Notes under the pieces: model-generated
What the model was told of the DNA's origin: nothing
The model's database searches: none
What the model saw: the letters and a program-made list of their open reading frames with translations, nothing else
Virus record (IMG/VR): IMGVR_UViG_3300017963_000188
Location: 248,001-312,000 of that record
Length of the DNA: 64,000 nucleotides
Strand: one strand, 5' to 3'
Part shown: in pieces, positions 13,501 to 46,700 of the stretch
Numbering within the stretch: the stretch's first letter is position 1
Layout: every line of letters begins with the position of its first letter
Position numbers and translations under genes: made by a program

Positions 13501-16500
13501 TTGGGTGTAGCTATTGAAGATAACCGTACTGTAGTTCAAGTTGGTTCCAAGTTCCCTTCAGAATATTACTACACACCAGGAGCTTTGGAGCGATCTATCC
13601 GACCTGTGTTTCCAGATCAGACAACAGAATTTGTGACAAGTCTCCCATTGGTTACCACAGAGCCATTTACTCTTCGTCTCAGGAATAAAAATGCCGGTAC
13701 TGTTGAGGAACTAGTTTTGGATACTGATTTGAGTGTATCTGAATCAGGTGCCCTTTTACTACTAACCAAGGCATTAGGTTCCAATGATATTCTTGAATTC
13801 AATTACGCTGGTAGAGAAACGTATGATGAAGACCATGAATTCTCAGGAGAGTATATTTACAGATATGTGCCTGATGATTCAAATCAGTTCTTGGGGGCTT
13901 CTATTATTGCCTCTTATACCGTCTATAACCCAGATACACTGTATTTCAGGGTAGAGCCTTTCAATACCATTGCTCTTGAAGTTTCATCTGCCCTGGGGGA
14001 AGCTGCGGCTTCTCAAGCACCTTCTTCAGGTCCTCCTGGCCCACCACCCCCACCACCAGCTCTAAATGAGAAAGGGAAGAGCACTTTCTACTGGGATTAT
14101 GGTGATACTGTAGACAGTGATGCCGTGGCAAGAAGGTATTTGTTATATTACAATGATGTCTGCAATTTGATAGAAGACCTTTTGGCATATTTTGATGGTA
14201 GAGTTGTGGGGGATATTCACGGGAAGTTCCTTTTTACAGACAGTCTTTACACAACTCCTGTTGAACCAAGTGCTGCTGTGAATCATATCGATAGCATTAT
14301 CTATATTTCACCAGCTTGGCCTGCATTCCCATCCCCTCCTTTCCCACCTGGATTCCCACCACGTCGTTCACAGGCAATGTGGAAGGGTTCAAGATATAGT
14401 CGTCTATATCCTGAATATGGTAAATTCTTTGGTGCTAGCTCTCCTACAGAAGGGGCTGGTCCTGGTTATTCATTCCCTGATGAATTTTTGAAAGAGATTT
14501 ATGAAATTGGTCGTGAGAATTTAGCAAGTATTTCAGGTGTGAAAGACCGTCCAGCTCGAACCAAACTTCTCAATTCAATAGCTTCAGGAGAAAGTTCAGC
14601 TACATTAGAAGTAGAGAGTGCTTCTGAAGATGGTGAGGAATTCATGGTTCCTGGGTTTGCTGTTGATGATGAGGTGATGATAGGACGTACCTCAAATCCA
14701 TATCTTGTGGCTGGGATAGTTACAGCAGTAGATACAGGGTCCACTCCGAATACAATCACTGTTGATTTCGTTTCATATAGCCTTACCCCCACATTACCAC
14801 CCCCCAGTGGTACTACATGCCCTGCTCTTTTACCTAATGACACGGTATATCATAATCCATTTTGGTGGGAAGATGATGGTGGCGGGAACCCAATTGGTCA
14901 TTTCCAAACATATAAGACAGGGCTTGATTTTGCAGTGGATATGAAAGCTGGGAATCTTATCAATATGGGGTTCCCATTCCCACTTCCAGGTCAGACTCCA
15001 ATTCAACCATTGTCTTACCTAGAAGGTAAGATTAGTTACGGCAATGCCCTTACAGAACCATACCGATTCCCAGCTTTGGATGGGCAAGTATACAATGATT
15101 GGAATGACAGAGAAATTCCATTCAAGATCAATGCAACAGCAAACTTTGATTTTGTATTTGAGGGTGAAGAAGATCTTATAGATGCTATTACGGCAAATAC
15201 TCTTGAGGGTGTTCGAGATACTGATGGTGATATTTTGTCAGATCGTCAGACTTTTGAGGGAGATATTGCTGGATACAATCTTGAAGTTAATGATGAGCTG
15301 ATTCTTCTTACAGGTTCAAATACAGGTCGTTATCTTATCACATCTTTTCCAACTTCTGTGCAAGCTAAGGTAGCAGCATTTAAACATCGTCAAGATGGTA
15401 CTGTTGATTATGAGATCTGGGATTCTACTGAAACAACTCTTAGGACCAGTGGGACTACAGCTAATATCCAAACTGACCTTCTGACACTTCAAGACACGGG
15501 TAAAAATTTCCCCGTAGCTGGAGTTATTGTTGGGGATAAACTTATCGTTAATTCAACTTCTGGGTACTACAATAACGGGACATATTGGATACAGACGGTT
15601 GCTACTACCACAGTTTCGGTGCGAGCCTTTAGTACCTCAGAGACTGGTGTTTCATTCGATATCAAACGAGGTACAAGCACTACTGGTCGGGCTTCTGGTG
15701 ATACAGGGTATTTTGACACCACTACGGTTTTCATTGATCCTAATGCTACATGGGAAACAGATGAATTGGTGAAGGGAGATACTCTGGTAATCCCTGAAGG
15801 GAAGAATCGGGGGAACTGGAGAATCAATAGTATTGATAGTGAAACTCAAATGACTCTTCAGGATGCTGTCCGAGTTGCTGAGGATGGGACAGGTGGTAGT
15901 CTAACTGACACAGGGGCAAATGATCGTCTTGATGTTTCTGGCACAGTATTTCAAAGTAGTGATGTGGGTCGTAAAATAACCATCACAGGTACTTCTAACG
16001 GAAATGATGGGACATATACTATTCTATCTTTTATTGATAGCAACAGTATCACAATTAGTGGAAGTTTCCCAGGGACCCTCCCTGATACAGGGAATTGGGC
16101 TCTATGCGTTGATTACAAAGTTGATGATGTGAGACGTGAATCTCAATATATAGCAGATTGGAGAACAAAACTTCTAGAAGAACAGTCTGAACTTCAAGAT
16201 GTTACTTTCCAAGGTATTTTGGATGACCTTTTTGATACTCTATATGATACATCAGCCTTTGTTTCTGGGACTTCCGGTGCGGTGACTGGGGCTCAAACTT
16301 TCCAAGACACTTCAAAAGATTTTGAAGTTCTAGGTGTAGTGAAGGGAGATATTCTAGAAATATCTTCAGGTGTAAATGCTGGTATGTGGTGGGTAGAAGA
16401 AGTCAGTGGAGATACCATTACTATTCCAAGTACAGATGCTTTTCCAAGTACAGATACTGGTCTATCGTATGATGTCTGGCAAGGAAATACTCGATTTTCA

Positions 16501-25074: not shown

Positions 25075-28000
25075 ATGACTACTTATGACACAACTGGGAA
25101 CCCTATTTTACCTGCTGGGGTAGAAGAATTTTTAGATGGGAACCCCTCTACTTTCATAGACCGATTCATTCGCACTAGGTTTGGACCTATTGTTAAGGGT
25201 GATGGCGAGGGGAAGATTGCAGATGATCCTTCAGATGTGACTGTCCTGGTGAATAGTACCCCAGCTACTGTAAAGGCTGTACTAGGTCTTATCGGTATTG
25301 TGGTTTTGGAGGATGCACCATTACCAACTGATACAGTAAAGATTTGGTATGATCATTTAAGTCGTCCACGAGTTGAGTTTAGGCGTTTGAATTCAGTTGA
25401 GTTTGTCTTAAATGCAGATGGTAATAGAGCTTGGGGTTATCAGCGATATCTTTATGAGAATGTGTTGATAGATCCTTCTATTGACAATCCTCTTGGTTTC
25501 CAAGGAGGTGCTGTAGGTACTGATCCAGAGCTTTTTGGATACTTCTATCGAGCCTATGAAAGAGCATATTCCATAGCTCTGAATGACCCAAATCTGTTGT
25601 TGTTGAATTCACCACACCATCGTATCGCATATCCTCCATTTTCGAGAGGTCTTTACGAGACTTTGGTGAGCTATGATGGTAATGTTCTTCCAGAGAATCA
25701 TGTCACTTATCCATGGGATTCTGCTGGTTCAGGGATATCTTCTGTAGATGGTCGTTTGACCATTGAAGATAACAGTAGTGGAGCTTTTCCCACAGGGAAA
25801 GGTTACTATTACTATCGTCCAGAAGACCTTTCATTTCAGTATACAATGTCGTTTTCATATCGTTCAAAAGTGACATCTTATACTTTGACAGGTTGTTTTT
25901 CAGGGGTGGCTTCTGGGTTCATTGATGGTAGGAATCTTTGTCTCATAGCATGTATAGAAGATTCTGGTACAAAATATATTGGCATACTGAAAAAAGGTGG
26001 CGATGAAACAATATTTTCATCTTATGAAAGTTATGAGTTGGATTGGAGTGAGTATCATATCTTCAGACTATATCGTACCATTGATCAGGTGCGTCTTTAT
26101 GTAGATGGTGGTGCTGCACCAATACTTACTGTTTCCACTTCTGACTTAGCTGATCCCAATGAATTAGAACTCCAGATTGACTTTATAACGGGAACATTTT
26201 TTGGGAGTATGAGCCGGAATTCAGTCAATGTTTCTGAATGGGATTATCTAAGATATCTGATTACTCCTATCTCTCCAAGTGAGTCGGCTCATTATGTTAA
26301 TGTCTTGTATGAGGCAAATTCTCTTCCTACTGAGGCAGGTTCACCTTGGTTTAAGATAGGGGCATTTGGAACTGAGAGATTACTTGGTATCGAAACTCTT
26401 TTGTTGAACAAGATATCAGCTTCTGAAGAGCCATATTCTTCTGAGGGAGGTTTAATTTCGGGGGAAGTGTTTGGGTATCATCGACCCGAACCATTCCTCT
26501 CATCTCAATCTGTGCTCGCTTTAGACTGGAAAGTGAGAGGGTATAGTTGGACTCATGGTGTTTCTGAGAGATCTCTAGGTGTATTTGCAAATGATTATGA
26601 TAGGCTATTAGCTATATCATTCTTCTCAGATGTTGAATTACCATTGTTATCATATAATGGGCAAGTTACTCCTGATACTGATCCAGAAACTCCTTGGACA
26701 CCAACTGGAACAGCTACAATTGAGGTGGTAGATAATATCCTCAATATAGATGATAGTTCTGATACTGGAGGTATCTTATATGGCAGAGAAGATGTAGCTA
26801 ATAATATTCTGGGGCATGATCAGAATTATATCTATGAATTCAGAGCAAAGGTAAATTCATATTCAGCAGATCCTTCTGGGTTTATAGGTGTCTTGACTGA
26901 AATTTTTGATGGTGTGCCTGGTACTGACTCTGGTCCTTTGATTGCTAGTCTCACAGATCTTCCTGTATCAGATAGTTTGACAGTTACAGGGCTGTTTAGT
27001 CCTGATGATGTAGATAAATATGTTACAGTCACCAATTCGACTCAAGGTAATAATGGTACTTATCAAATTGTAAGTTATATTTCAGCAGATCAGGTTCAGG
27101 TATCACCTTCATTCCCAGGTACAATTCCTGAGACAGGAACTGGTGTTCGAGCAAATATGTTAGGGGGGTATCCTGGTCGTAACATACAAGTGATGTTGAG
27201 AGAAGAAGGTGGTGGGACCAAGGTAATTTCATTCGCTTCTGAAGGCACTGTTTTATCTTCTATAGCTTTTACTTGGAACGATAGTGAATTTCATACCTAT
27301 CGAGTCATTGTCAATCAAGATAGTGACCTAGTAATGCTTATGGTTGACGGTCTTTCAAAGGGAACATTGGCCTATACTTCTTTCACTGAGAGTGCTGGTG
27401 ATACTGCTTATTTTGAGTTTGGATCTTCTGGTCCTTCATCTGATGAGTCCATTTCTAATGTTGATTGGGATTATTTCAATTCATATCCCATAAGAAGTTC
27501 GAGTAATGAATATGTTGGTATTTACAAGGGTGGTGATGTCACCGATATAGATAATTATGAGAAAGTATCTGTAGATTTCTCTTCTTATCATGAATATAGA
27601 GTAGTCAGAGATCCTAATGGCTCAGTTAGTCTTTTCATTGATGGGGCTTTAGCTATTTCATTTTCTTATCTGGATTTGCCGGATGCTTATGGCACATTCT
27701 TTGATATTGAAGGTGGGGCTGGATCTGGGGTGTATTGGGGTTCTTTTGACGAGTCAGCTCTTGTTTTAAGTGAGTGGGATTATCTCAGATTCACTATTGC
27801 TGGTGCTAAGGGATTTGATGTCATAGCACCTCACCATGAAATCTTGAATCAACAGAATGTCATTGCAAGTCCAGATCATATTTATGGTGATGTGGCAGAT
27901 CATAGCCATACCAATTTCTTGTCTTCTTCTACTGGTATCCCCACTCCTATAGAAGATTATTATGATAAAAAAGAAGTGATTGATGCTTACACTCAGTTGA

Positions 28001-32878: not shown

Positions 32879-35455
32879 ATGGATAAGAATTTTGATGGTT
32901 CTGTTTCGGGTTATCTAGATCCTGAAGAAAGAGCCTGGGAAACAATAGTTTACCAAAGCTCAAAGCCAATCTTGGATGTGGAGCAAAACTTACTTCAAGA
33001 TGCAAATTTTGAAGCTGCTCTTCGTAGGGTATCAGTTCCCAGTGGTTGGTTAAAGGGTGATTTCCTTGGTGGGAATATTGATTTTGAATACAGTAGCTCT
33101 ACAGCTAATGAATTCAAGTTGGTCAATAAACCAGTAGCTTTGGTGAATGGTTGGAAAGTAGTTGTCGAGTATACTGGCACTGATACAGCAAAAGAAAATA
33201 TACTTTCATTGTCAGCACCTCCAGCTACAGGTTGGAGAACAGACTTCGTGTTTTTAGAGGTCTGGAGGGCTTTGTTGAGTGCTAGTCCAGACACAACCAA
33301 TAAATCTGCTGGTGGTCGTGTCTATAGACATGGTAATGTAGGTATTGATCCAGCTCATGACGCTACTTTGAACTTTACAGATGATATTTTGCAGACTCCT
33401 CCTGGAGCTGAAACTTCTAAGAGAGTTCAGATTCAATATCGAATCAGAGTTGTAGATGGGATCAATATTAGTAGTTTCCCAATGGGTATGAACGATCCAA
33501 ATGTTGAGGCTCAGGGCACACAAGGATCTCCTGTAGGCACCTATACTTTTACTAACATGGGAGCTACTGCTGGTGATTATGGTCTATGGAGAGCCGGTGC
33601 TGGTGATACAGCGTCTCAGACAGCTCTTGGGACTGTGGATGGGTATAGTTATGCTATCCCCATTGCTGCTGTGTTTAGACGGAATACAACTGCTTTCTCA
33701 CAGTCTACTAATCATAATGGTGGTGTCCTGATAAGTGCTGGTACAAGTGACCGTCCAGATGATTTGTTTTCTGATGAGATTTCAAATGGTGATGTCCTTG
33801 ATATGAGACAGGGTACATCTCTTGTGGGTTGGGACCTTGATGAAATCTTGGAAACAAGCTTTTCAGCTTTGCTTGATAATACTTTATCTCAGGTAGAACA
33901 GAACACTAATAGTGTTCCTGGTTACACCTATGGGATGGTAGGGACTACTGTTCTACATGCTGATGAGATTGGTCCTGCTGGTACAGGTGGTTTGGGAGGT
34001 ATGAATATAGGGGAGCAGGATGCTGTCAGAAGGCGTTTCTCTGATAGAGCTATAGTAGAGCATCCCATAGTCATAAAAACCCCTACAGGAGCAACCTGGG
34101 TGAGTGACGAGGTTGTTACAATCAATCTTGGTAACTTCAATCCATATCCATTTGATGAGGGTTCAGGGTTTGACCTTGCATCAATGAGCCCTGCAAATAC
34201 GGTCATTACCGATATTCGATCTGCCTATTTTGATCATCCAAATACAACTACTGGTAAGGTCAAGGCATTTTTCAGTGAGATAAAGGGTATTGGTTCAAAT
34301 ATTGTCACATTGACTCTTGCGGATGGGGTGTGGACAGGTAATAGTCCTGATCTATGGCTCGAAGTTGAAATATCCTACCCACCTGGGAATGGTTTGACTG
34401 CAACTCCATCCAATGATTTTGGAGATACTTGGAATTCTGGTGCAGGTGGACCATTTACTTTGGAAGATGACCCCGCTGGTAGTCGTCCCGCTGACTTCAA
34501 TGACTTTGTAAATCTTGAAGTGGTGAAAAATAACCGTGAAGTTCAGGTTTTGTATGAGACAACAGATAAGACACTAGATGTATATGCTAAGGATGTGAAC
34601 ACTATAGTCCTTCCAGATCGTGTTGGTTCTGTGACAAGTGTAACAGAAGATCCATTGGGCACACCTGTTGGTCATTCATTTACTTTTACAGCAAATGATC
34701 CAGATAGGGAGATTTCAACATCTGTTGATCCACTTTCAGATCCAGATGCTTTAGTCAGAGTGGTCTATAAAGCTCTTAGACCTATTCCAAATACAGTAGG
34801 GTACTATCAAACAGTTTTTTATCAATCCAGAGCATTACAGCCTGTGAAAGATAGTATGCTGCCGAATAGTTTATTGTATCGTACCTTGTATGTGAGCCCA
34901 TATATATACGCTTTGACTGGTGGGACGGGATCATTTGGAGCTACTTATCCATATGAAGTTCCTCATGTCCACATCCCTGTATATATCAATGGAGCAGCTC
35001 CATATGTATTCAATGGGGAACATGAATTAGACTCTCCTCTTGACACCTTTACTGATGACTTTGATGCTGCTTCGGGATTTTTAAGAGTTTCTCAGAATAT
35101 ACCTCTTGTTCCGATGGCTTCAGCAGAATTACAACGGACTGCTGTGACTGATGTTGATCCTGAACAACGGGCTTTTTACCCAGAAGTACCAACATCAGAA
35201 TATCGACCCGCAGCATTTGGTAAGAACCTTTCTTTCCCACAGCGGCATAAAGTGTTCTTTCCAATTATAGCAGAACTTTTAGATGACTATGATTTCGGTA
35301 ACAAAGGCACATTGGTAATGATTGTCTTTATCCGATGGGCTGAAAATGACAATGAGAACAATGTCAGATTCGTAGATACTCCTGCTGATGATACTAGTTG
35401 TGCTGCTGTTTACCGACTCAAGGGGAATCTGTTACTGAATAGACGGAGTGTCTAA
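32879..35455 (+). CDS. Tail fibre/baseplate appendage protein, family A paralog 1 (DUF4815/DUF6519-like N-terminus)
   Basis: 858 aa. IVYQSSKPILDVEQN, DFVFLEVWRA, ETSKRVQIQYRIRV and GLWRAG...DGYSYAIPIAAVFRRN are shared with ORF 55380-59384. Confidence 0.6.
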   Translation: MDKNFDGSVSGYLDPEERAWETIVYQSSKPILDVEQNLLQDANFEAALRRVSVPSGWLKGDFLGGNIDFEYSSSTANEFKLVNKPVALVNGWKVVVEYTGTDTAKENILSLSAPPATGWRTDFVFLEVWRALLSASPDTTNKSAGGRVYRHGNVGIDPAHDATLNFTDDILQTPPGAETSKRVQIQYRIRVVDGINISSFPMGMNDPNVEAQGTQGSPVGTYTFTNMGATAGDYGLWRAGAGDTASQTALGTVDGYSYAIPIAAVFRRNTTAFSQSTNHNGGVLISAGTSDRPDDLFSDEISNGDVLDMRQGTSLVGWDLDEILETSFSALLDNTLSQVEQNTNSVPGYTYGMVGTTVLHADEIGPAGTGGLGGMNIGEQDAVRRRFSDRAIVEHPIVIKTPTGATWVSDEVVTINLGNFNPYPFDEGSGFDLASMSPANTVITDIRSAYFDHPNTTTGKVKAFFSEIKGIGSNIVTLTLADGVWTGNSPDLWLEVEISYPPGNGLTATPSNDFGDTWNSGAGGPFTLEDDPAGSRPADFNDFVNLEVVKNNREVQVLYETTDKTLDVYAKDVNTIVLPDRVGSVTSVTEDPLGTPVGHSFTFTANDPDREISTSVDPLSDPDALVRVVYKALRPIPNTVGYYQTVFYQSRALQPVKDSMLPNSLLYRTLYVSPYIYALTGGTGSFGATYPYEVPHVHIPVYINGAAPYVFNGEHELDSPLDTFTDDFDAASGFLRVSQNIPLVPMASAELQRTAVTDVDPEQRAFYPEVPTSEYRPAAFGKNLSFPQRHKVFFPIIAELLDDYDFGNKGTLVMIVFIRWAENDNENNVRFVDTPADDTSCAAVYRLKGNLLLNRRSV

Positions 35456-38400
35456 TGCCGACTAAAGTAGACCCAGGCACATTAGCCATTGGGAATGGTA
35501 AAGCAGCACAGGATTCTGTGTCTGTATCTTCCCTTGACTTTGCTCATGTAGTGGATTTCCAGGCTGCTCTATCAGGGCATCTCAATGATCCAATAGGTGC
35601 TCATCCAGCCACAGCTATTTCAACTCAGGATACCTATGGTAAATTCGATTGGACCCATGTCGAAGGGTCTTTGAATGAATTATCAGATCTCATGCCAGAT
35701 CTGATCAATACTTTGGGACAAGAGCAAGAGGGAGTCCCAAATAGTGGTGTGCCTTATTGGGGTACATTGGAAGATACTTACGATAGAATTGGAACCACTC
35801 AATCAGGTGGTTTTACTTGTACTACAGCAAATCATGCTCATGCTTCATGGAGTGGTGGGAATCAGGGGGGTACTCCTGGTAATTGGTTAGTAGAGACTCA
35901 TTGTTTACTTCAAAGTTCTATCACTACCTTTGATCTTTCTGGTATTTTGTACCCTGCTGACAGAGGGTATTTAGTATTGCTATATGCAAAGAATGGTGTC
36001 TTTGATAATACTGTGAATACAATTGAAGTTGGGGAACTTGATCTAGAAGCTAATTTCAGTGAGTCTTATAGACGTGTTCCCAATTATCAACAACCTAATT
36101 ATGTGGGTGTAGATACACATGATTCTGGGCCTGATATTTTCACACTAACATATCGACTCCCAGCTCTTAAGGAGTACAGTGCAGGAACACCTTATGAGCC
36201 ATATGATTTCAATTATCTGCAATTTCAGTTGGCTTATTTCAGTGTATCTATTGATCTCACATTATCACCATTCAATATTGGGGTTGATGTAGATTTTGGT
36301 TCTTTGAAACTGTTTCATTTCAAGACCTACAGTAATGTTGCTACAGCAGACTATAGTGCTTCAAATCTGTATGGGTCTCATGGTAAGTATGATATCTATA
36401 GTGAAGTCGATCCTGGACTGCCTGTTATTGGGACTCCTGGGACTGATTATATAGTTGAACCTACTTTTCCAGTTGGTACTGAAACACCTCCTGGTGGTAG
36501 TTATAACTGCGATTTGGCATCTCCAAATGATTTCACAAGTGCTTCAGCAGTCTTTGCAGGAGATGCTACTGATAGAGGGAAGATACTTACAGTCACAGGA
36601 TCAGTGAATGGTAACAATGGGGACTACCAAATATTAGTCGAAGATACGACTACTCATGTCAAGGTATATCCTGATTTTCCGGGGTCTCTTCCAGAAACCA
36701 CATTGAATTTTAGTATTTCTGCTCCAAATATTTTCAGATTGTCTGGTATATATCACTATGGTTCTGATAATGGATTTTGGTTGAAGTCAAGTATTGCAGG
36801 AGCAGTTTCTGGACTATGGAATCTCTCATATCTTACTGGGGTAGAATCAGATAGTAAGGTTTCTTCTGGATATCTTAGTGATAAATCTCCTTTGAAATAT
36901 GACCTTACAGATTTTGGTGCTGGGACTAGAGAAATCCCATATCATTTGTTAGATAATAATGATGCTATCAATCCTACTGATGGGTGGGATTTGAGTAAGG
37001 GAAATGGTCCAGGGCAGAGTGATGATGCAGAATACATAGGGGTTCTCATCAGCGGATCATCAGGTGGTGGTGTGAGTGACGATGCAAAAGTAAAAAATAC
37101 AATACGCACACCTTTTGCTTTGACAGAACTCGATGCAATCACTCAAACTGGTAATAAAATTCTGACAAATGCTTATGAACAGATTATAACTGGTAGATCA
37201 CAGATCGAAGATTTCACTACAGAGTTATTCAGGTATCATTTTGATGTGGCTCAAGATGAAAACACAGATTTGTTTGAACATGAGAGATACCCTTTAGTTC
37301 CTTATACTAGAGCTACTCCCAATATTGGTAATGATGGGGTGGTTTCTTCTACCAACACACTTACTTCTGCTACTGCAAATTTCACCAGTGGTGATACTGG
37401 GCGCACAATATTGATTTCTAGTGTGAAACTTTATTGGTCTGATAGTACAGCAAACAAAATACAAAGGTCCAACATTGATGGTTCGAGTGTTGAGGATGTT
37501 GTCACTGGTATTGGAGATGCTGCTGGTTTAGCACTCGATATTAATGGTGGGAAAATATATTGGGCCAATGCAACGGATCAGAAAGTACAACGAGCTAATT
37601 TTGATGGTTCAAGCATTGAAGATTTGGTGACTGGTCTTGGCACTAAGGTGTTTGCTGTTGCTTTAGATTTAGCTGTTGGGAAAATGTACTGGGCAGATTC
37701 GGATGCTGATAAAATACAACGATCTAATTTAGATGGGTCTGATGTTGAAGATGTTGTTTTAACGGGGGTAGGTAATCTTCAAAGCCTCGCTTTAAATCAC
37801 AATCTCCAAAAAGTATACTGGTCTGATCAAGGGACTTCAAAAATACAACGAGCCAATTTTGATGGTTCTGATGTTGAAGATGTTATCACAGGTGCTTCAG
37901 GTCCTAATAATATTGCTTTTGATTATACTGAAGGGAAGATGTACTGGACTGAGACAGCAGGTAACTCTATACGGAAAGCGAATTTTGATGGTTCAAGTGC
38001 AGTAAATGTCCTTACAGGATTGTCATGGCCAAGAGGTATGGCAATAAATGTTGAAGAAAGGAAGATTTATTGGTTTGACGGGAGCACCAACAATTTAAGG
38101 CAAACAGATTTCGATGGTAGCTACCTTTTGACTTTGAATTCAGGGATTTCGAATATGCCTCATATAGCATATTATGATAATCCTGTGTACGATGGTAGTT
38201 ACAAAGCTACATATGTTAGTTCTACTCAAATTACAGTGGAACCTGATTGGCCTACTCATATAGAAACTTCTGTGTCTTGGTACTTCCCAACAGTCTGGGA
38301 TTCTGATCTTGCTTTAGGATCACATATCCAGAACGAGCTTCAAGTTTTGGATGGTAAACTTGTTTACCCACAGACTAATTTCACTGCTGGGTATTACCCT

Positions 38401-39597
38401 AGTAATGGTCAGCAAAATTACGCTACGTTGTTTGCTGCTGATGTTGCTAATACAATTCGATGGTATACTCGACTTATTGACACACAATCTCCAGCAAATA
38501 GTGGTAAAATTCGTATCAAAGGTATTTCTGATTCTGCTTTTGCTGCTGGTGTTTACACAGGGGATTTGGTAGCAGACCATTCAGGTGGGGCTGTGGTTTT
38601 GATGAAAGTTCCTGGTGTGACAGGGTGGCTTGATTTGGGTCGTTATGATGGAGATCCAAATTCTGATAAGACTCAAGATTACTATGGTTGTTTAACATTT
38701 GCTTTTTACACTCAGGATATACAAACAGGGGTAGGTACCACATATGGTATAGCTCTTGATACTGATTCTGAAAAGATATATTGGGCTGATAGTAGTAGTG
38801 GGGATATTAAACGATCTGATTTTGATGGTAGTAACATTGAAACCATTCATACAGGACTTGGATCTCTTCGAGGTATTGCCATTGATGCAAATGGTGGAAA
38901 ACTCTATTGGGTTGATTTCACTGGTTTCATCTATCGTTCAAATATAGATGGATCAAATATTGAGACAATAATCTCAGGGTTGTCTTTTCCCAGATGTCTT
39001 GCTCTAGATATAGATGCAGGTAAGTTGTATTATGGGGGTAATGGTGGGATAAAACGATCCAATCTGGATGGCTCTGATATTGAAGATATTATCATTATAG
39101 GGACTGTAGGTGGGTTGTCTCTAGATACAAATGCCGAGAAAGTGTATTGGTTTGATATTCTTGGCACAAAGAAAATCCTACGAGCCAATCTTGATGGTAG
39201 TTCGGTGGAGGTTCTTGTAGATTATGGGATTGACCCTACTGGTATTGCTGTTGATGCTGCTGGAGGGAAAATATATTGGGTTGATACTACAGGCACAGAT
39301 TATGTTAAACGTGCTAACCTAGATGGTTCTGATATTGAAGATGTTATAGGTCTAGGGAGTCAGAACCCTACTGCTATAGTTTTAGATGTTTCTGATAATA
39401 TTATGTATTGGGCAGAGGATTCCAGTAGTAAGATCCGAAGAGCCAACATGGATGGTTCAGGTATTTATAGTTATAACACTGAATTCTACACTCAAGATAA
39501 TGGTGATGGGGGATGCCCTATTGCTATTAGGATAGGTTTCATCAAAGATGGTACGGGTGAAAACCATGAGGTTGAATCCATTGAATGGTTACCATAA
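35455..39597 (+). CDS. Virion appendage protein, family B paralog 1, with two six-bladed LDLR class B (YWTD) beta-propellers
   Basis: 1380 aa. HLNDPIGAHPATAIS fibre-type motif. Twelve KxYWxD...IxRxNxDGS repeats (about 37423-38175 and 38718-39462). KVPGVTGWLDLG C-terminal scaffold. Confidence 0.8.
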   Translation: MPTKVDPGTLAIGNGKAAQDSVSVSSLDFAHVVDFQAALSGHLNDPIGAHPATAISTQDTYGKFDWTHVEGSLNELSDLMPDLINTLGQEQEGVPNSGVPYWGTLEDTYDRIGTTQSGGFTCTTANHAHASWSGGNQGGTPGNWLVETHCLLQSSITTFDLSGILYPADRGYLVLLYAKNGVFDNTVNTIEVGELDLEANFSESYRRVPNYQQPNYVGVDTHDSGPDIFTLTYRLPALKEYSAGTPYEPYDFNYLQFQLAYFSVSIDLTLSPFNIGVDVDFGSLKLFHFKTYSNVATADYSASNLYGSHGKYDIYSEVDPGLPVIGTPGTDYIVEPTFPVGTETPPGGSYNCDLASPNDFTSASAVFAGDATDRGKILTVTGSVNGNNGDYQILVEDTTTHVKVYPDFPGSLPETTLNFSISAPNIFRLSGIYHYGSDNGFWLKSSIAGAVSGLWNLSYLTGVESDSKVSSGYLSDKSPLKYDLTDFGAGTREIPYHLLDNNDAINPTDGWDLSKGNGPGQSDDAEYIGVLISGSSGGGVSDDAKVKNTIRTPFALTELDAITQTGNKILTNAYEQIITGRSQIEDFTTELFRYHFDVAQDENTDLFEHERYPLVPYTRATPNIGNDGVVSSTNTLTSATANFTSGDTGRTILISSVKLYWSDSTANKIQRSNIDGSSVEDVVTGIGDAAGLALDINGGKIYWANATDQKVQRANFDGSSIEDLVTGLGTKVFAVALDLAVGKMYWADSDADKIQRSNLDGSDVEDVVLTGVGNLQSLALNHNLQKVYWSDQGTSKIQRANFDGSDVEDVITGASGPNNIAFDYTEGKMYWTETAGNSIRKANFDGSSAVNVLTGLSWPRGMAINVEERKIYWFDGSTNNLRQTDFDGSYLLTLNSGISNMPHIAYYDNPVYDGSYKATYVSSTQITVEPDWPTHIETSVSWYFPTVWDSDLALGSHIQNELQVLDGKLVYPQTNFTAGYYPSNGQQNYATLFAADVANTIRWYTRLIDTQSPANSGKIRIKGISDSAFAAGVYTGDLVADHSGGAVVLMKVPGVTGWLDLGRYDGDPNSDKTQDYYGCLTFAFYTQDIQTGVGTTYGIALDTDSEKIYWADSSSGDIKRSDFDGSNIETIHTGLGSLRGIAIDANGGKLYWVDFTGFIYRSNIDGSNIETIISGLSFPRCLALDIDAGKLYYGGNGGIKRSNLDGSDIEDIIIIGTVGGLSLDTNAEKVYWFDILGTKKILRANLDGSSVEVLVDYGIDPTGIAVDAAGGKIYWVDTTGTDYVKRANLDGSDIEDVIGLGSQNPTAIVLDVSDNIMYWAEDSSSKIRRANMDGSGIYSYNTEFYTQDNGDGGCPIAIRIGFIKDGTGENHEVESIEWLP

Positions 39598-39609: not shown

Positions 39610-42600
39610 ATGCCAACTAAAGTAGATCCAGGTACTCTTGCCATAGGTAGTGGTAAGGCTGCTCAAGATAGTATTTCAGTATCTTCTCTTGATTTTGCTC
39701 ATTTGATTGATTTTCAAGCAGCTTTGTCAGCTCACGTCAATGACCCTGATGGGGCTCATCCAGCTTCTGCTATTTCGGTGCAGGATGTTTACGCAAAATA
39801 TGATGGTGTGAATGCTGAAATCGTGTTTGATGAAATTTCTGATCTTGTTCCAGATTACCCTAATGCTATTGGTGAAAGTCGATCAGTTCCAAATTCGGGA
39901 GTGCCTGATTGGGGTGTTTTGGATACATACTCTAAGACAGGTGGTTTCACTTGTGATACAGCAAATCATGGTCATACATCGTGGGGTGGTGGGAATCAAG
40001 GAGGCACCCCAGGGGATTGGATAGCAGAGACTCATTGTTTGATTCCTGATACAGTCACAGGCTGTGTAATTACAGGTACACTGTACCCTGCTGATAGAGG
40101 ATACCTTGTGCTATTGTATGCTACAAAGGGTGTGTTTGATAATAGTGGGGATACAATAGAAGTTGGAAAGCTGAATCTAGCTTCTAATTTTGATGAGCTT
40201 CGTAGACGAAACCCTGCTGTGGGATACCAACAACTTGATTACACAGCTTCTGAAAATCATTGGGACCCTGGCACAGATATATTTTCACTAACGTATCGTC
40301 TTCCAATGCTAAAGGAATATGATGCTGGAGTACCTTATACTACATATGATTTCAATTATCTTCAGTTCCAATTAGCTCGATACACAGCCACATTGGATTT
40401 GACGGCTACTCCATTTGATATTGGTACTGATGTAGATTTTGGATCTCTTAAATTGTTCCATTTCAAGTCATATACAAATGTGGCTGGAGCTAATTACAGT
40501 GCTTCAAATCTGTATGGGTCACATGGGAAATTGGATATTTATTCTGACACTTCACCAGCAGCTCCAACTTTAAATGAAGCTGGTGGTGAGGTATTAATCA
40601 ATGCTGCATATCCTTTGGGTACAGAAACAACGTCAGTAGTAGCAAATGCTGACCTCACAACTCCGAACAATCTGGCTGCTGGTACAGCAATCTTTGCTGG
40701 AGATTCTACAGACCGTGGCAAGATACTTACCATTACAGGTTCTAGTCAGGGGAACAATGGTACTTACCAAGTTTTGAATGAGGTAGACGCCTCGAATGTC
40801 AAGGTATACCCTAATTTCCCTGGCACATTGCCTGATACAGTGACACCACAAGTGCAGATAGAAGGTGCTAATGTAGTACGTCTTTCAGGAATAGCACATT
40901 ATGGTCCTGATAATGGTTTTTATGTAGACCAGACTTTTATCACCACTCCAGATTTTTGGAATAATTCATACCTAACCAGTGATGTGGCTGATCCAAAAGT
41001 GTCTTCGGAGTATTTAAGTGATAAGTCACCTCTGAGTTATGACTTTAGTGATTTCGGAGTTGTTGTAAAAGACATACCTTACCATTTGGATCTTTCTTCT
41101 GTTAGTTTGAGTAAAGGAGATGGACCAGCAATAGATACTTCTGCTAGTCATCGAGCTACATTCATAAGTCAAGAATCTTTAGTAGTAAGAAAGGGTGGTA
41201 GTTCCTATTTGTCTAGAGTATCACATATAGTACGTTCTCCTTTCACCACAATGCAAGATTACAGCTCAAATCCAGTTGGTATCCTTTTGGTAGACGTTTA
41301 TGGGCAAGAAATATCTAGTAAAATGAAAGAAGAATTTTACACAGAGCAGTATAGATATGATCTTGGTACAGATCTCTTAGAGTTCATCAAGTATCCAATA
41401 ATTCCTTATGATCGTAGTGCTCCAAATTTTGGGGATGATGGTGTTGTTTCAGGGTCAAATACCTTTACTTCAGCTACAGCTAGTTTTACTTCAGCAGATA
41501 CTGGTAGAATAATAAATATTGCTAAAAGGCCAAAATTATATTGGACTGACCGTCAGGATGACCAAATTCAAAGATCTAATCTTGATGGAGCATTTGTCGA
41601 GACCGTGTATTCATGGGGACAGAATCCAAATGGTATAGCTTTAGATACTGTTAATGGTAAAATTTACTGGGCTGATTTTAATTACCAAGAAGTAAAGAGA
41701 ATGAATTTTGATGGTAGTGGTTTTGAGACAGTATGGTCGGGACAGCAAGTATATAAAATAGCACTTGATGTAGATGCTGGTAAAATTTATTACTCAGACA
41801 GAGGAGACCATTGGATAAAACGAGCAAATATGTCAGATGGTTCTAGTAAAGAAAGTCTTATTAATTATGATGATGTCGATTGTGTGTTTCTTGATATCGA
41901 TGCAGGTAAAATATACTATACTACAGGAAGCCCAGGATTAAATACCATCTCTAGAGCTAATATGTCTGATGGTTCTAGTATTGAAGTTTTGTATACTGTA
42001 ACCAGTCCTGAATGGATACCTGATTTTGCTTTTGACTTAATACATGGATATATTTATTTTACAGTTATTGGTCCTTCAGGTAGAATTATGCGGTGTGATT
42101 TGGATGGTTCAAATGATGTCACAATAACACCATCAGTAATGGCTTACAATATTGAAATTGATGTTGATGGTGGTAAGTTATATTGGAGTGATGTGACTTC
42201 CAATGTCATTAAATGGAGTGACTTGGATGGTTCTAATATTGAAAGTATTATTTCAGTGACATCAGGGTCCGAATCTGTGAGGGATATGGCTCTGATGTTG
42301 GAATCTTCTTTTGAGAGTTATACTGCTACTTATGTCAATGGTACTGAAATAAGTGTGAGTCCCGATTGGCCTTCAGTAGATGGTGTTATGCGGGAATGGA
42401 GATTTCCAGTGCAATTTGATTCAGATGCAGATCTTTCAACATTCACACAAAAAGAACTTCAAGTTGCATCTGGGCAATTAGTAGTGCCAGAAAATGATTA
42501 CACCGCAGGTTGGGCTTTACCAAGTGCTGGTCAGTTTGATTATAGTGGTTTAGCAGGTGGGGACCCTGCTGATACAATTCGATGGTATACAAGACTTTTT

Positions 42601-43773
42601 GACACTGGAGGACCTACTAATGTAGGTAGATTCCGAATTAAAGGTATACATCAAAAAGATTTTGGAGTGACTGGGCCTTTCACTGGTGATTTACCTACAG
42701 ATCATGAAGGTGACACTATATCTGGTGAGGGTGGATCAGTAGGGGGTGGTGTAGTTGTTTTGGTGAAAATACCTGGTGTGACAGGTTGGTTGGATCTAGG
42801 TCGTAGTAATGGTGATCCTAACATTGATAAGACAAAAGATTACTATGGATGTCTGGTTCAGTCTAACCAAATTGAGAATCTGGTAGATGGTCTTACAGAT
42901 TCAAATGCCATAGCTCTTGATATAAATGCTAGTAAGATGTATTGGACTGACACAGTAACTTCAAAAATACAACGATCTGACCTTGATGGATCGAATGTTG
43001 AAGATATTTACACAGCATCAGATGCTTGGGGTATTGCTCTGGATACTAATGCTGATAAAATGTACTTCACTAGTCCAGGCGCAAATAAGATTAGAAAAGC
43101 AGACCTAGATGGTAGTAATGTAGAAGATTTAGTAGATACTGGGTCAGGATTGCCTACAAGTATTGCTTTGGATATCAATGCTGGTAAAATGTATTGGATC
43201 AGTTTTGGACCTCCAAATCATATCTATCGAGCAAATTTAGATGGCTCAATGGTAGAAACTCTTGTATCAAATATTGGTGCTAATCCTTATGGTATAGCAT
43301 TAGATGTGGATGCTGGATATATGTATTGGTCTGATACAGCAGAGAGTTATATTAGACGAGCTGATTTGGATGGTTCTTTTGTAGATATCGTGGTGGAAGA
43401 TGCTTTGAGTCCAAATGGAATAGCTCTTGATCTAGAAGAAGGGAAGATTTATTGGCAAGGTCTGAGTCAAATCAATAGATGTGACCTTGATGGTTCTAAT
43501 AGGGAAGATTCTATAACACCCAGAGGATTGACTAAAGGGAAAGGTTTGGCTTTGGATACGGATTCTCGTAAGATATACTGGACCAATTATAATCACCATA
43601 AGATACAAAAGACAAGTATGGATGGTATGAGCATATATACTTACACTACAGATTATTACACTCAAGATAACGGTTTGGGAGAGTATCCCATTGCTATTAG
43701 GATAGGTTTAATAAAAGATGGTTATGGTTACTGGAATGACGTGGTAACTATCGAATGGCTACCGTATACATAA
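39610..43773 (+). CDS. Virion appendage protein, family B paralog 2, with two YWTD beta-propellers
   Basis: 1387 aa. Collinear full-length paralog of the previous gene (MPTKVDPGTLAIG start, EWLP end). Twelve YWTD-type repeats (about 41530-42300 and 42871-43626). Confidence 0.8.
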   Translation: MPTKVDPGTLAIGSGKAAQDSISVSSLDFAHLIDFQAALSAHVNDPDGAHPASAISVQDVYAKYDGVNAEIVFDEISDLVPDYPNAIGESRSVPNSGVPDWGVLDTYSKTGGFTCDTANHGHTSWGGGNQGGTPGDWIAETHCLIPDTVTGCVITGTLYPADRGYLVLLYATKGVFDNSGDTIEVGKLNLASNFDELRRRNPAVGYQQLDYTASENHWDPGTDIFSLTYRLPMLKEYDAGVPYTTYDFNYLQFQLARYTATLDLTATPFDIGTDVDFGSLKLFHFKSYTNVAGANYSASNLYGSHGKLDIYSDTSPAAPTLNEAGGEVLINAAYPLGTETTSVVANADLTTPNNLAAGTAIFAGDSTDRGKILTITGSSQGNNGTYQVLNEVDASNVKVYPNFPGTLPDTVTPQVQIEGANVVRLSGIAHYGPDNGFYVDQTFITTPDFWNNSYLTSDVADPKVSSEYLSDKSPLSYDFSDFGVVVKDIPYHLDLSSVSLSKGDGPAIDTSASHRATFISQESLVVRKGGSSYLSRVSHIVRSPFTTMQDYSSNPVGILLVDVYGQEISSKMKEEFYTEQYRYDLGTDLLEFIKYPIIPYDRSAPNFGDDGVVSGSNTFTSATASFTSADTGRIINIAKRPKLYWTDRQDDQIQRSNLDGAFVETVYSWGQNPNGIALDTVNGKIYWADFNYQEVKRMNFDGSGFETVWSGQQVYKIALDVDAGKIYYSDRGDHWIKRANMSDGSSKESLINYDDVDCVFLDIDAGKIYYTTGSPGLNTISRANMSDGSSIEVLYTVTSPEWIPDFAFDLIHGYIYFTVIGPSGRIMRCDLDGSNDVTITPSVMAYNIEIDVDGGKLYWSDVTSNVIKWSDLDGSNIESIISVTSGSESVRDMALMLESSFESYTATYVNGTEISVSPDWPSVDGVMREWRFPVQFDSDADLSTFTQKELQVASGQLVVPENDYTAGWALPSAGQFDYSGLAGGDPADTIRWYTRLFDTGGPTNVGRFRIKGIHQKDFGVTGPFTGDLPTDHEGDTISGEGGSVGGGVVVLVKIPGVTGWLDLGRSNGDPNIDKTKDYYGCLVQSNQIENLVDGLTDSNAIALDINASKMYWTDTVTSKIQRSDLDGSNVEDIYTASDAWGIALDTNADKMYFTSPGANKIRKADLDGSNVEDLVDTGSGLPTSIALDINAGKMYWISFGPPNHIYRANLDGSMVETLVSNIGANPYGIALDVDAGYMYWSDTAESYIRRADLDGSFVDIVVEDALSPNGIALDLEEGKIYWQGLSQINRCDLDGSNREDSITPRGLTKGKGLALDTDSRKIYWTNYNHHKIQKTSMDGMSIYTYTTDYYTQDNGLGEYPIAIRIGLIKDGYGYWNDVVTIEWLPYT

Positions 43774-43785
43774 GGATGTTTAGGC

Positions 43786-46700
43786 ATGGCAACATTCAAC
43801 GACCATTTCAAAGATCTCTTAAATCTTGTTGCCAAGAGAGTTTTGGGTCGGGAGCACACTTCTGATATTCCTATTGACTTGGAAGGAGCCTATCGTCCCT
43901 ACAATCAAATAACTCCATTTGATAAGATTGAAGATACAGGTCTTAGTGAATTTAAGTATACTTCTGGTATCAGGAAGTCAAACGCTACTCAGCCAGAAGT
44001 TAATCTTTTCAGTTTTTCTGATAATATTTCTGATAATGCTCAAGGACGTATTGCTACTATTTACGGTATTAAAGAAGTAAGCTATTCAGATACTGATGGT
44101 AGTGACGTTGGGTATGTAGCTGATAACTACAGATTCATTCACAGGACGTTTGATTTCCCTGACCAGGGGGTCAGTGCTGGGGATGTTATGTTTGTGCCTC
44201 TGACAGGTAGATTCTACGTCTCAGATGCAGTTATTACAGGAGATCCACCTAATACTGGACTTCAATTTCCTGTAGATACTTTTTCAGAGCCTACATTCAC
44301 ATTTGGTTCAGATATTGATGTTCTGATTCTTCAGAGAAATGCTGTTCAACTTTTCACTGTATCTGGACCCAATGTAGAAGTAGGTCGAGAACAAACCTTT
44401 TTTATGGTTACTCCTGATGTGGTTCAAAACCCAAGTCCTTATCTTGCTGACTTAAATTTGCTATCTCCAAAACGTCTACGTCCCTTGATGCCTCATAGGA
44501 AGAGTACCAAGATTGATTCAATCTTCACAAAAGGAGTGTTGGGTCTCAAATCAGATTGGGATTTTATGCTGGTTCTTTATCCAGATGATGGTGCTGGAAA
44601 TCCAGATTACACAAAACCAATCATAGGACCGAGACCTATAATCGATAGCTCTATCTCTGATGAACAGGAAATGATTATTGACCATATGAATGGTTCTGTT
44701 CATTTTACAGTGCCTCCACGTCCAGGAGATGAAATCAATCCAAATGCTGTGACCGGAGCACCCCTGAAACTGTGGGCTATCTTTGCTACCATAACAATGG
44801 GCACTAGTGTATCTCAGACAAATTCAAATAGTCTTGTTCGAGGTGTCAGTGATTTCAACCCAGTATTGGTTGATGATAAAACAAGCACCCCTTCATATTT
44901 CAGATATGACCAGAATAGAAAGATTTGGTCGTTATTTTCAGGAGAAAAATATCTAGAAACAGATCCAGCAAATCAACCAGCTCAAGGGTTTGAGGTTGGT
45001 GAGCTAGGAGTAGAGAAAACCAACAGAGCAGGTTTCAGATTAAATCCAGAGAATGAAACTTGGGAAGTGTGTTCTATCCCTTCTGATTCTGATTTCATAC
45101 CGTTACGACTCACTTCAGGAGAAGTTGGGGGTACTCATCCTGGTATCAGTGTGGACGCTCCAGGATATACAGGTGGTTTCTTTTATAACAGTGGTGAAGA
45201 TAGATGGGGTTTGGATAAAGACCTATACATGGTTACTGCTGTTGAGGAATTAGGTTCTGATTCTTTACCTAATAGTTCGAATGTGAAAGTGGCTGTGTCT
45301 GGTAATTTTGCATATATTATCAGGAATGTGTCTGGTGATGGGTTCCTTTATGTATATGATATATCAGATCCTAATGCTATTGTTATGAGAGATTCTGAAG
45401 TTGTTGCAGGTCGTGAATTTCTAGACATAGATATATCTGGAACCAATGTTTTTGTCCTTATAACAAATGAAATTCAAGTCTACAATGTTTCAAATCCAGA
45501 TAGTATCTCATTGACAGATGGGTACCCTGCTGGTTCAGATGTGTATTTCCAAAGATTAAAAGTAATTGGTGATTATGTTTATGTTGTTGTACTATCATAC
45601 TTTACAGAATTATTCAATTGGGGATCTAGTCTATGGGTTCTTGATTTTAATGTGACAACGGCAGATGAACTCACTTATAGAGATGATGCTAATGTTCTTG
45701 GTCCACATGATCCACCTGGTCCTGGTTATGTGTCAGTGACAACAACTGATGTTTCTATAATAGCTACTATGATGTATAAAGAAGTTTTGTATACAATTGA
45801 TGTCACAGATCCAGATTCTGTATCTGTTCTTGATAGCGTTGTTGTTACAGATGGAACAGAAGTTGATGTTGAAAGAGACATAGTTGCAGTGTTATGTCCT
45901 GATGAATCTATAGATACTTTGAGGTTGTTTGATATTTCCAATCCGTCTTCCATACAAGTTAGAGATACTACAACATCTGGTTTGGATTCACCTGTTGATG
46001 TGATTGTTTCTCGTGGATATGTTTGGGTAGCTAATAGTGGTGATATGACACTTCTCAAATTTAGTGCTGTGAATCCTCTTAATATTGTGTTAGATAATTC
46101 ATATATCCAAACAGGTAATGGATTACTAGATCTAGATCTTAATAATAGTAAATTAGCTGTGTTAACAAGTAGTCCAACTACTGATATTCTGAAAATTTAT
46201 AATGAAATAAATACACAAGTACAGTTCCATCAAATAATATCTTCTTCAATTGATACTGATTATCTTGATTCTGAAACGGCAGTCATTGAAGATTTGACTG
46301 CAACAATAGTCAGGACAAATACTATTGATGGTGGCAGTTCTTTATTGTCTGTAGATGCTAATACTGAAATAACAGGTTCACTAATAACTAATGGTGTGAC
46401 CAATTCTGGTATTGTGCGGAGTTCTGATTCTAATATACCAATCCAAGGAAGTGCTACTGGGTCATATTCATCTAGTCAGATAGTAGGTTCTCAGCTCGCT
46501 CCTTGGGGTGTTGATATCGATTACACTACTGGTAAAGTCTATTGGGCCAGTTATGGTAGATCTTCTGGGCAAGATATCATTCAAAGAGCTAATCTAGATG
46601 GGACGAATGTTGAAACAATAATTGGTGGCTTGCAGCAACCATATGCTTTAGAGTTAGATGTTCCTGGAGGAAAAGTCTATTGGTCTGATATGTTTACCAA

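What the first reader, a model, noticed from the sequence alone, without database searches (positions are those of the whole stretch)
37357..38280. YWTD propeller inserted into the loop of a small repeated domain
Seen: the intact module elsewhere reads e.g. VFQSSDVGRKITITGTSNGNDGTYTILSFIDSNSITISGSFPG (2115-aa ORF). In ORF 35455 the same module is split: TLTSATANFTSGDTGRTILIS-[six YWTD blades]-NPVYDGSYKATYVSSTQITVEPDWP. The paralog is split at the same point: TFTSATASFTSADTGRIINIA-[propeller]-FESYTATYVNGTEISVSPDWP (about 41460-42375). Inference: the propeller is a domain insertion at the GxxxG turn. YWTD propellers close with their termini adjacent, so they suit loop insertion. The small domain would act as a mounting socket.
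Basis: partly seen in the sequence, partly recalled or inferred. Interest (0 to 1): 0.78.

Follow-up and report, generated by a model that had tools for sequence, protein, structure and literature searches.

The report
Propeller domain nested inside small barrel
Two neighbouring tail-fibre genes of a 358-kb phage carry a six-bladed YWTD propeller inserted into a hairpin loop of a small beta-barrel domain; relatives with an unbroken barrel show it is a real domain insertion, a neat but not unprecedented way for a phage to add a probable binding head.

Summary

- **The split.** In ORF 35455-39597 (1380 aa) the module is split after aa 655. A 253-aa six-bladed YWTD propeller follows (nt 37420-38178), and the module resumes at aa 909. 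The paralog 39610-43773 is split in the same loop.
- **Sequence evidence.** Profiles built only from intact modules match both flanks. MAFFT, unprompted, laid 45 intact modules across the gap.
- **Natural series.** A syntenic metagenomic relative (P0003) has an unbroken module at exactly this position. A more distant relative (P0004) has no propeller at all.
- **Models.** AlphaFold models give the split and intact versions the same strand order. The propeller sits between strands β2 and β3 on 2- and 6-residue linkers.
A second propeller is nested in the C-terminal domain of both proteins.
- **Limits.** The module family is large (457 cluster representatives, no Pfam model), but no other split copy was found. 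"General mounting socket" is therefore not shown. The order of events is unresolved.
- **Function.** The setting is the baseplate and fibre block of a jumbo phage, so the propellers are most likely host-binding heads. This is inferred, not shown.

It is a new variant of a known kind, of moderate interest.

The parts
35455..39597 (+). Gene for a 1380-aa putative tail-fibre or receptor-binding protein with two nested YWTD propellers
   Evidence: ORF; Pfam Ldl_recept_b E 1.2e-41. It lies downstream of genes for a baseplate hub and a baseplate wedge in a 358-kb virus record.
36529..36699 (+). Intact copy of the small beta-barrel module in the same protein (aa 359-415)
   Evidence: profile hit at 61 bits, E 4.6e-18.
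37324..37419 (+). Left half of the split module (aa 624-655: strands β0, β1, a short 3-10 turn, β2)
   Evidence: Profile positions 1-29, 24.9 bits, E 8.5e-7. Model strands at aa 624-630, 635-638 and 651-655, pLDDT 74-93.
37420..38178 (+). Inserted six-bladed YWTD beta-propeller (aa 656-908). It begins at a KLYWSD strand and ends at an IAYY strand.
38179..38283 (+). Right half of the split module (aa 909-943: 6-residue linker, then β3, β4, β5)
   Evidence: Profile positions 38-66, 10.5 bits, E 0.027. Model strands at aa 914-922, 925-929 and 939-943, pLDDT 68-96.
38695..39462 (+). Second YWTD propeller (aa 1081-1336), nested in the C-terminal domain between YYGCL and IYSYNTEFYTQ
   Evidence: Alignment A1: P0004 has 12 residues here and P0003 has a propeller. 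Pfam matches at aa 1087-1298; coordinates.
39610..43773 (+). Paralogous gene (1387 aa), 58% identical over the 781 alignment columns filled in all four homologs, with the same two nested propellers
41428..41523 (+). Left half of the split module in the paralog (aa 607-638)
   Evidence: Profile positions 1-30, 26.6 bits, E 2.5e-7.
41524..42309 (+). Inserted YWTD propeller of the paralog (aa 639-900), 36% identical to the one in ORF 35455
42310..42402 (+). Right half of the split module in the paralog (from aa 901)
42856..43632 (+). Second (C-terminal) nested propeller of the paralog (aa 1083-1341)
15925..16089 (+).
26974..27135 (+). Intact module in the 1658-aa ORF 25075-30051 (aa 634-687)

Best explanation
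ORF 35455 and its tandem paralog ORF 39610 are fibre-like proteins of a jumbo phage's baseplate and fibre block.

Their second copy of a roughly 55-80-aa six-stranded beta-barrel module has taken up a complete six-bladed YWTD propeller in the β2-β3 hairpin. The propeller replaces the 6-8-residue G-x-x-x-G-N-x-G loop. It starts directly at a YWTD strand, 2 residues after β2. It ends with the innermost strand of the closing blade, 6 residues before β3. The barrel can therefore still close, and it carries the propeller on two very short linkers.

A second propeller is nested in the same way in a loop of the C-terminal domain.

- **Shown:** the split; homology of the flanks to intact modules; the existence of insert-free relatives; the propeller fold.
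- **Inferred from models:** that the flanks form one barrel.
- **Inferred from context:** that the propellers are outward-facing host-binding heads added stepwise to an older fibre scaffold (0, then 1, then 2 propellers).
For: **Split and homology**
- Searches give the coordinates and the profile scores against shuffles.
- 45 intact modules were aligned across the gap by MAFFT.

**Natural series**
- P0003 (1109 aa) has an intact module with the canonical loop at the same site, plus only the C-terminal propeller.
- P0004 (839 aa) has neither propeller.
- both relatives lie in syntenic fibre blocks.

**Structure**
- aa 620-944 have pLDDT 74-96, with 24 propeller strands between β2 and β3.
- the intact module has pLDDT 91.5 and the same strand order.
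- the flanks given as separate chains score ipSAE 0.42 against 0.00 for controls.
- matches to LRP6, LRP4 and megalin propellers at E 1e-21.

**Direction of change**
- The loop in P0003 matches the consensus of more than 350 modules. A precise deletion restoring that consensus is unlikely.

**Context**
- PHROG families for baseplate hub, baseplate wedge and tail proteins occur upstream and downstream.
- The record is a 358-kb virus.

**Fast-evolving heads**
- The propellers are 36-44% identical between homologs, against 58-61% for the scaffold.
Against: - No coordinates could be read. Barrel closure and closeness of the insert's ends rest on pLDDT, strand order and the complex score, which the tool itself rates as weak support.
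- The AF2 alignment contained intact modules, so that model is partly guided by homology.
- Only two outside relatives exist. The three possible branching orders of the four proteins are all unrejected (AU p 0.31, 0.79, 0.15).
- One insertion before the duplication, two insertions, and a loss in P0003 therefore cannot be told apart by the tree.
- No binding data and no host are known.
- Weaker Pfam matches to SGL/lactonase-type propellers leave an enzymatic role open.
Confidence: 0.85

Rival explanations
1. The ancestral fibre already carried the propeller in the module, and the P0003 lineage lost it by a precise in-frame deletion.
For: The best four-taxon tree groups ORF 35455 with P0003 (bootstrap 71%). 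That order would need a loss, or else two gains.
Against: - The P0003 loop (GTSNGNDG) matches the family consensus residue for residue.
- P0004, the most distant relative, also lacks the insert.
- The tree is not significant (AU p 0.31-0.79).
Confidence: 0.07
2. The β2-β3 loop is a recurrent landing site. The two paralogs acquired or swapped their propellers independently (cassette exchange).
For: - The two inserted propellers are only 36% identical. The one in ORF 35455 is closer to a bacterial propeller (52%) and to the C-terminal propellers (41-42%) than to its paralog's.
- The propeller tree is a star.
- The four-taxon topology is unresolved.
Against: - The C-terminal propellers, present in all three proteins, are just as diverged (38-44%). 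Fast evolution alone explains the numbers.
- Both inserts share the same unusual phase, starting at the YWTD strand and ending at the blade's first strand, at the same loop position.
Confidence: 0.12
3. The propellers are enzymes (lactonase/SGL-like or a depolymerase) rather than binding heads.
For: Pfam SGL (E 2e-14), Vgb_lyase and Arylesterase matches overlap the propellers.
Against: - Ldl_recept_b is far stronger (E 1e-41).
- The best structural matches are the non-catalytic LRP6, LRP4 and megalin propellers.
- The nearest sequence relatives are bacterial surface proteins with several propellers in a row plus dockerin or T9SS sorting domains.
Confidence: 0.15
4. The resemblance of the flanks to the module is chance or an assembly artefact.
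For: The C-terminal half scores weakly on its own (10.5 bits).
Against: - The N half scores E 8.5e-7.
- The rejoined flanks score 22 bits against 9.6 in shuffles.
- The orthologous intact module aligns on both sides.
- The paralog has the same architecture.
- One contig spans both junctions in two runs with no differences.
Confidence: 0.01

Closest known systems
YWTD (LDL-receptor class B) six-bladed beta-propellers of LRP6, LRP4, megalin and LDLR, and their bacterial surface-protein relatives
   Same: Six repeats of about 42 aa with the YWTD motif. Pfam PF00058 E 1e-41. Foldseek E 1e-21, rmsd 1.7-2.8 A over about 257 columns. 45-52% identity to bacterial multi-propeller proteins.
   Different: There are no flanking EGF modules. 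Here the propeller is cut open between the first and second strands of one blade and tied into a hairpin of another domain. It sits in a phage fibre. A full-text search found no paper describing YWTD propellers in phage tails.
Small beta-barrel domain of phage virion proteins: Carin-1 tail nozzle (PDB 8ck1_A, aa 583-675) and the phage Bridgette decoration protein (8eci)
   Same: The profile of 143 modules hits 8ck1_A at E 2.5e-5 and 8eci at E 0.042. They are also the best structural matches, Z 8.3 and 7.3.
   Different: Those copies are unbroken. The family has no Pfam model: 0 of 10 full proteins and 0 consistent hits in 143 modules.
Endosialidase tailspikes of phages K1F and phi92 (PDB 1v0e, 4hiz)
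   Same: These are also a phage host-recognition protein that combines a six-bladed propeller with a small beta-barrel of similar fold by domain nesting (barrel at 4hiz_A aa 255-340, Z 7.1).
   Different: From my own knowledge of those structures, the topology is the reverse: there the barrel is inserted into the propeller, and the propeller is a catalytic sialidase.
Known nested-domain cases: integrin alpha-I domain in a propeller loop, beta-I in hybrid in PSI, P22 coat I-domain, and carbohydrate-binding modules inserted in 'evolved' Dit proteins of siphophages
   Same: A complete autonomous domain is inserted in a surface loop of a parent domain that stays folded. In phages this is used to add binding functions.
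   Different: Both partners differ. Here the parent is much smaller than the insert (about 60 aa against 253 aa). These comparisons rest on my own knowledge; only PMC12422189 (integrin alpha-I) surfaced in search.
Ubiquitin E1 FCCH domain (PDB 2v31, 4p22)
   Same: Similar six-stranded barrel (Z 6.5-7.0). An AlphaFold DB cluster named FCCH-domain protein matches at TM 0.66.
   Different: No sequence relationship was detected. Z values below 8 are common background for this aligner (note).

Membership tests
YWTD / LDL-receptor class B propeller (Pfam PF00058) | Six tandem repeats of about 42 aa with the YWTD-type motif, above Pfam's gathering score | tested here: met
   141.3 bits against a cutoff of 21, E 1.2e-41. 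Six KxYW units are visible in the translation. DNA period is 126-129 nt.
YWTD / LDL-receptor class B propeller (Pfam PF00058) | Six-bladed, four-stranded propeller fold that superposes on solved YWTD propellers | tested here: met
   24 strands, pLDDT 81-91. LRP6, LRP4 and megalin at E 1e-21 to 1e-19, rmsd 1.7-2.8 A.
YWTD / LDL-receptor class B propeller (Pfam PF00058) | Flanking EGF-like module packed on the propeller, as in animal LDLR-family receptors (a feature of the context, not of the domain) | tested here: not met
   No EGF family in the Pfam scan. The flanks are the two halves of the barrel module.
Small beta-barrel module of phage virion proteins (unnamed; 8ck1_A and 8eci relatives) | Sequence match of both halves to a profile built from intact modules | tested here: met
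   N half E 8.5e-7, C half E 0.027, in order and with only the loop positions 30-37 missing. Rejoined flanks score 22.3 bits against 9.6 in shuffles. MAFFT split 45 modules across the gap.
Small beta-barrel module of phage virion proteins (unnamed; 8ck1_A and 8eci relatives) | Same order of secondary-structure elements as the intact domain | tested here: met
   β0, β1, 3-10 turn, β2, [loop or propeller], β3, β4, β5 in both models.
Nested (inserted) domain architecture | The parent domain is continuous in homologs that lack the insert | tested here: met
   P0003 aa 627-681 is intact at the aligned position. P0004 is also uninterrupted.
Nested (inserted) domain architecture | The insert is an autonomous domain found on its own elsewhere | tested here: met
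   791 proteins with E <= 1e-10 to the propeller alone, mostly bacterial. There is an N-terminal propeller in genome ORF 151958-154162.
Nested (inserted) domain architecture | The two halves of the parent fold together, and the insert's ends are adjacent | tested here: inconclusive
   Flanks have high pLDDT and linkers of 2 and 6 residues. Flanks as separate chains score ipSAE 0.42 against 0.00, formally 'weak support'. Coordinates were not readable, so no distance was measured.
Ubiquitin E1 FCCH domain (PF16190) | Sequence membership in the Pfam family | tested here: not met
   No such hit in 143 modules at E <= 1. There is only fold likeness, Z about 7.
Intein or other self-excising insert | Intein splicing blocks or a homing-endonuclease domain in the insert | tested here: not met
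   Pfam finds only propeller families in the insert. The insert is retained as a folded domain in the model.

The most novel reading that the evidence does not exclude
The β2-β3 hairpin of this barrel module, and the equivalent loop of the C-terminal domain, could be reusable docking sites. Jumbo phages would insert and exchange propeller cassettes there, independently in paralogous fibres, giving a cut-and-paste route to new host specificities that leaves the fibre scaffold untouched.
Probability: 0.12. Interest if true: 0.65.

Novelty: new variant of a known kind. Interest (0 to 1): 0.42.

Why it matters
This is a clean natural example of how a large binding domain can be grafted into a hairpin of a much smaller domain. 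Relatives with 0, 1 and 2 propellers are preserved, so the steps can be seen.

It points to loops in phage fibre scaffolds that tolerate a 250-aa insert on very short linkers. That is useful knowledge for engineering receptor-binding proteins.

It also flags two things that lack description. One is YWTD propellers as likely phage host-recognition heads. The other is a widespread small barrel module (457 cluster representatives) that has no Pfam model.

Tried and rejected
- **Combined alignments.** Alignments holding orthologs, module fragments and many external propellers (A3, A5, A6, A7) were misaligned by MAFFT in one part or another. I discarded them. Only A4, without external propellers, was clean and used for folding.
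- **More relatives.** Scans of viral contigs and metagenome contigs with the family alignment returned only the window's own phage.
- **Propeller tree.** The tree of seven phage and 17 bacterial propellers was a star and gave no origin.
- **Order of events.** The four-taxon tree and AU test could not order the events.
- **Naming the families.** PHROGs gave nothing for the fibre proteins. Source names for module-family proteins were all 'hypothetical'.
- **C-terminal host domain.** The ESM Atlas feature search scored only 0.71, which is uninformative.
- **Same nested architecture elsewhere.** The BFVD and Atlas shape searches found propellers in phage and bacterial proteins, but no protein with this architecture.
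- **Foreign origin.** GC and third-position GC of the inserts equal those of the flanks, so there is no compositional trace of recent foreign origin.
- **Insert-free variant.** The 'joints' in the laid contigs are secondary matches to the paralog, not forms lacking the insert.
- **Intein or mobile element.** Considered and rejected.

Full report
**Setting**

The window is bases 248001-312000 of a 358,038-base virus record. All large ORFs are on the + strand. PHROG profiles mark a baseplate hub with lysozyme (ORF 7855), a baseplate wedge subunit (ORF 20836) and tail or tail-fibre proteins (ORFs 5249 and 55380).

The finding therefore lies in the baseplate and fibre block of a jumbo myovirus-like phage. 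ORF 35455-39597 (1380 aa) and ORF 39610-43773 (1387 aa) are tandem paralogs. They are 58% identical over the 781 alignment columns filled in all four homologs.

**Checking the observation**

- In ORF 35455 the left flank is aa 635-655, the insert aa 656-908 (nt 37420-38178), and the right flank aa 909-933.
- In the paralog the insert is aa 639-900 (nt 41524-42309).

The insert is a YWTD propeller on three counts:

- Pfam Ldl_recept_b scores E 1.2e-41 and 5.7e-30.
- The DNA shows units of 126-129 nt.
- The AlphaFold model has 24 strands in six groups of four and superposes on LRP6, LRP4 and megalin propellers (E 1e-21 to 1e-19, rmsd 1.7-2.8 A).

A single Logan contig covers nt 37365-38700, with both junctions, and has no differences in two public runs.

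**Are the flanks really the two halves of the module?**

Four lines of evidence say yes.

1. A profile of four intact copies from this window scored the rejoined flanks 22.3 bits (ORF 35455) and 15.3 bits (paralog). The maxima in 500 shuffles were 9.6 and 8.7.
2. A profile of 143 modules from other proteins was run on the unmodified full-length protein. It hit aa 627-655 with profile positions 1-29 (24.9 bits, E 8.5e-7) and aa 914-942 with positions 38-66 (10.5 bits, E 0.027). Only the loop positions 30-37 were missing.
3. MAFFT was given the region together with 45 intact module fragments. It opened the 253-residue gap by itself, put every left half on the left flank and every right half on the right flank, and left about six loop residues in between.

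**Homologs without the insert**

The large protein search found only two outside relatives.

- **P0003** (1109 aa) lies on a 16.8-kb metagenomic contig. Its gene order matches the window's ORFs 32177, 32879, [fibre], 43786-like, 52304, 54695, 55380. At the aligned position it has an unbroken module whose loop reads GTSNGNDG, which is the family consensus. It carries only the C-terminal propeller.
- **P0004** (839 aa, about 40% identical) has no propeller at either site. Where the C-terminal propeller sits in the others, it has 12 residues.

This gives a natural series of 0, 1 and 2 propellers on one scaffold.

**Structure**

The region aa 440-1085 was folded with the clean alignment A4. It gave a confident block at aa 620-944 (pLDDT 74-96), while the surrounding family-specific parts were poor.

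The strand order in the confident block is:

- β0 (aa 624-630), β1 (635-638), a short 3-10 turn, β2 (651-655);
- two linker residues;
- 24 propeller strands, beginning with KLYWSD and ending with IAYY;
- six linker residues;
- β3 (914-922), β4 (925-929), β5 (939-943).

The intact module of P0003 was folded with 143 sequences (pLDDT 91.5, pTM 0.80). It has the same elements in the same order, with a 7-residue β2-β3 loop.

I also gave the two flanks as separate chains, each with its own alignment, so that no sequence was altered. They were predicted to interlock: ipSAE 0.42 against 0.00 for the three controls, 134-138 contacts, and three runs in agreement. The tool's own verdict is 'weak support'.

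Barrel closure and the adjacency of the insert's ends are therefore inferred, not measured.

One caveat matters here. A4 contains intact modules, so the AF2 result is partly a homology model.

The propeller is cut between the first strand of a blade (its last strand in sequence) and the YWTD strand (its first strand in sequence). By the usual propeller convention the A-B loops lie on the bottom face. From general knowledge, the canonical ligand face would then point away from the barrel. This is an inference.

**What the small module is**

The profile found 457 cluster representatives at E <= 0.001 among 1.84 billion proteins. They usually hold 4-9 tandem copies. No Pfam family matched ten of the full proteins or any consistent share of the 143 modules.

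Solved relatives exist:

- the Carin-1 phage tail nozzle (8ck1_A, profile E 2.5e-5, structural Z 8.3);
- the phage Bridgette decoration protein (8eci, E 0.042, Z 7.3).

Weaker fold likeness extends to the barrel domain of the phi92 and K1F endosialidases and to the E1 FCCH domain.

Only the two window proteins have a split copy. The module is therefore not a general socket, and the insertion is a rare event.

**History**

The propellers are much more diverged than the scaffold. The inserted ones are 36% identical and the C-terminal ones 38-44%, against 58-61% for shared scaffold columns. The propeller tree is a star.

The three possible four-taxon topologies are all accepted (AU p 0.31, 0.79, 0.15). 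The data cannot say whether there was one insertion before the tandem duplication, two insertions at the same loop, or a loss in P0003.

- Against loss: the P0003 loop has the exact consensus.
- For a single event: both inserts have the same phase (YWTD strand first, blade strand 1 last) at the same loop position. The C-terminal propellers are cut in a different phase.
- GC and GC3 of the inserts equal those of the flanks.
- The nearest propeller relatives are bacterial surface proteins with several propellers plus dockerin or T9SS sorting domains, some from Gemmatimonadota. They are 45-52% identical.

**Function**

Nothing here is measured. Three things make a host-binding head the most likely role: the position in the fibre block, the fast-evolving propellers, and the likeness to non-catalytic YWTD propellers. 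Weaker SGL and lactonase-type Pfam matches keep an enzymatic role open at about 15%.

**Comparison and novelty**

Nested domains are well known. So are binding modules inserted into loops of phage tail proteins. The endosialidase tailspikes even combine a six-bladed propeller and a similar barrel, but in the reverse topology. These comparisons rest on my own knowledge.

A full-text search found no description of YWTD propellers in phage tails. I rate this a new variant of a known kind.

Noticed in passing
window 38695-39462 and 42856-43632: A second YWTD propeller is nested in a loop of the C-terminal domain of both paralogs, between YYGCL and (I)Y(S/T)Y.T(E/D).YTQ. P0003 has it; P0004 has 12 residues there instead.
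   Followed up: partly
window 38704-38719 and 39484-39499: A 16-nt direct repeat (14 of 16 identical) encoding FYTQD lies immediately before and after the second propeller of ORF 35455 only. It could be a recombination or duplication scar. About 0.1-0.3 such pairs are expected by chance in this stretch (my rough estimate).
   Followed up: partly
window 38112-38124 and 38190-38202: A 13-nt repeat, CGATGGTAG(C/T)TAC, encodes DGSY in the last blade of the inserted propeller and again in the right flank of the module. The blade motif DGS and the module motif (N)DG(T/S)Y share this microhomology.
   Followed up: no
window 43786-47415 (propeller about 46558-47235): ORF 43786 (1209 aa) has a YWTD propeller just before a roughly 50-aa C-terminal tail. 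That tail is shared with the 876-aa homolog on L008 (7933-10563), which has no propeller. This is a third propeller acquisition in the same fibre block. The first 480-570 aa or so are shared with ORFs 47387 and 52304.
   Followed up: partly
G000:C1:151958-154162 (outside the window; L003): A 735-aa open frame has an N-terminal YWTD propeller followed by two repeats of a roughly 150-aa domain. It is a free-standing use of the same propeller type elsewhere in the phage genome.
   Followed up: no
module family (alignment A8; for example window 36529-36699, 15925-16089, 26974-27135): The small barrel module has 457 cluster representatives at E <= 0.001, mostly in tandem arrays in unnamed metagenomic proteins. 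It has no Pfam model. Solved relatives are 8ck1_A and 8eci. It is a candidate for a new family definition.
   Followed up: partly
window about 35830-35850 (aa 127-132 of ORF 35455): An H-x-H-x-S-W motif (ANHAHASW) is invariant in all four homologs. It recalls the metal-binding His boxes of long-tail-fibre proteins. This comes from memory and was not tested.
   Followed up: no
window 32879-35455 and 55380-59384: The proteins flanking the fibre block share an N-terminal stretch of about 290 aa. The L008 orthologs of each hit both at about 40% identity.
   Followed up: no
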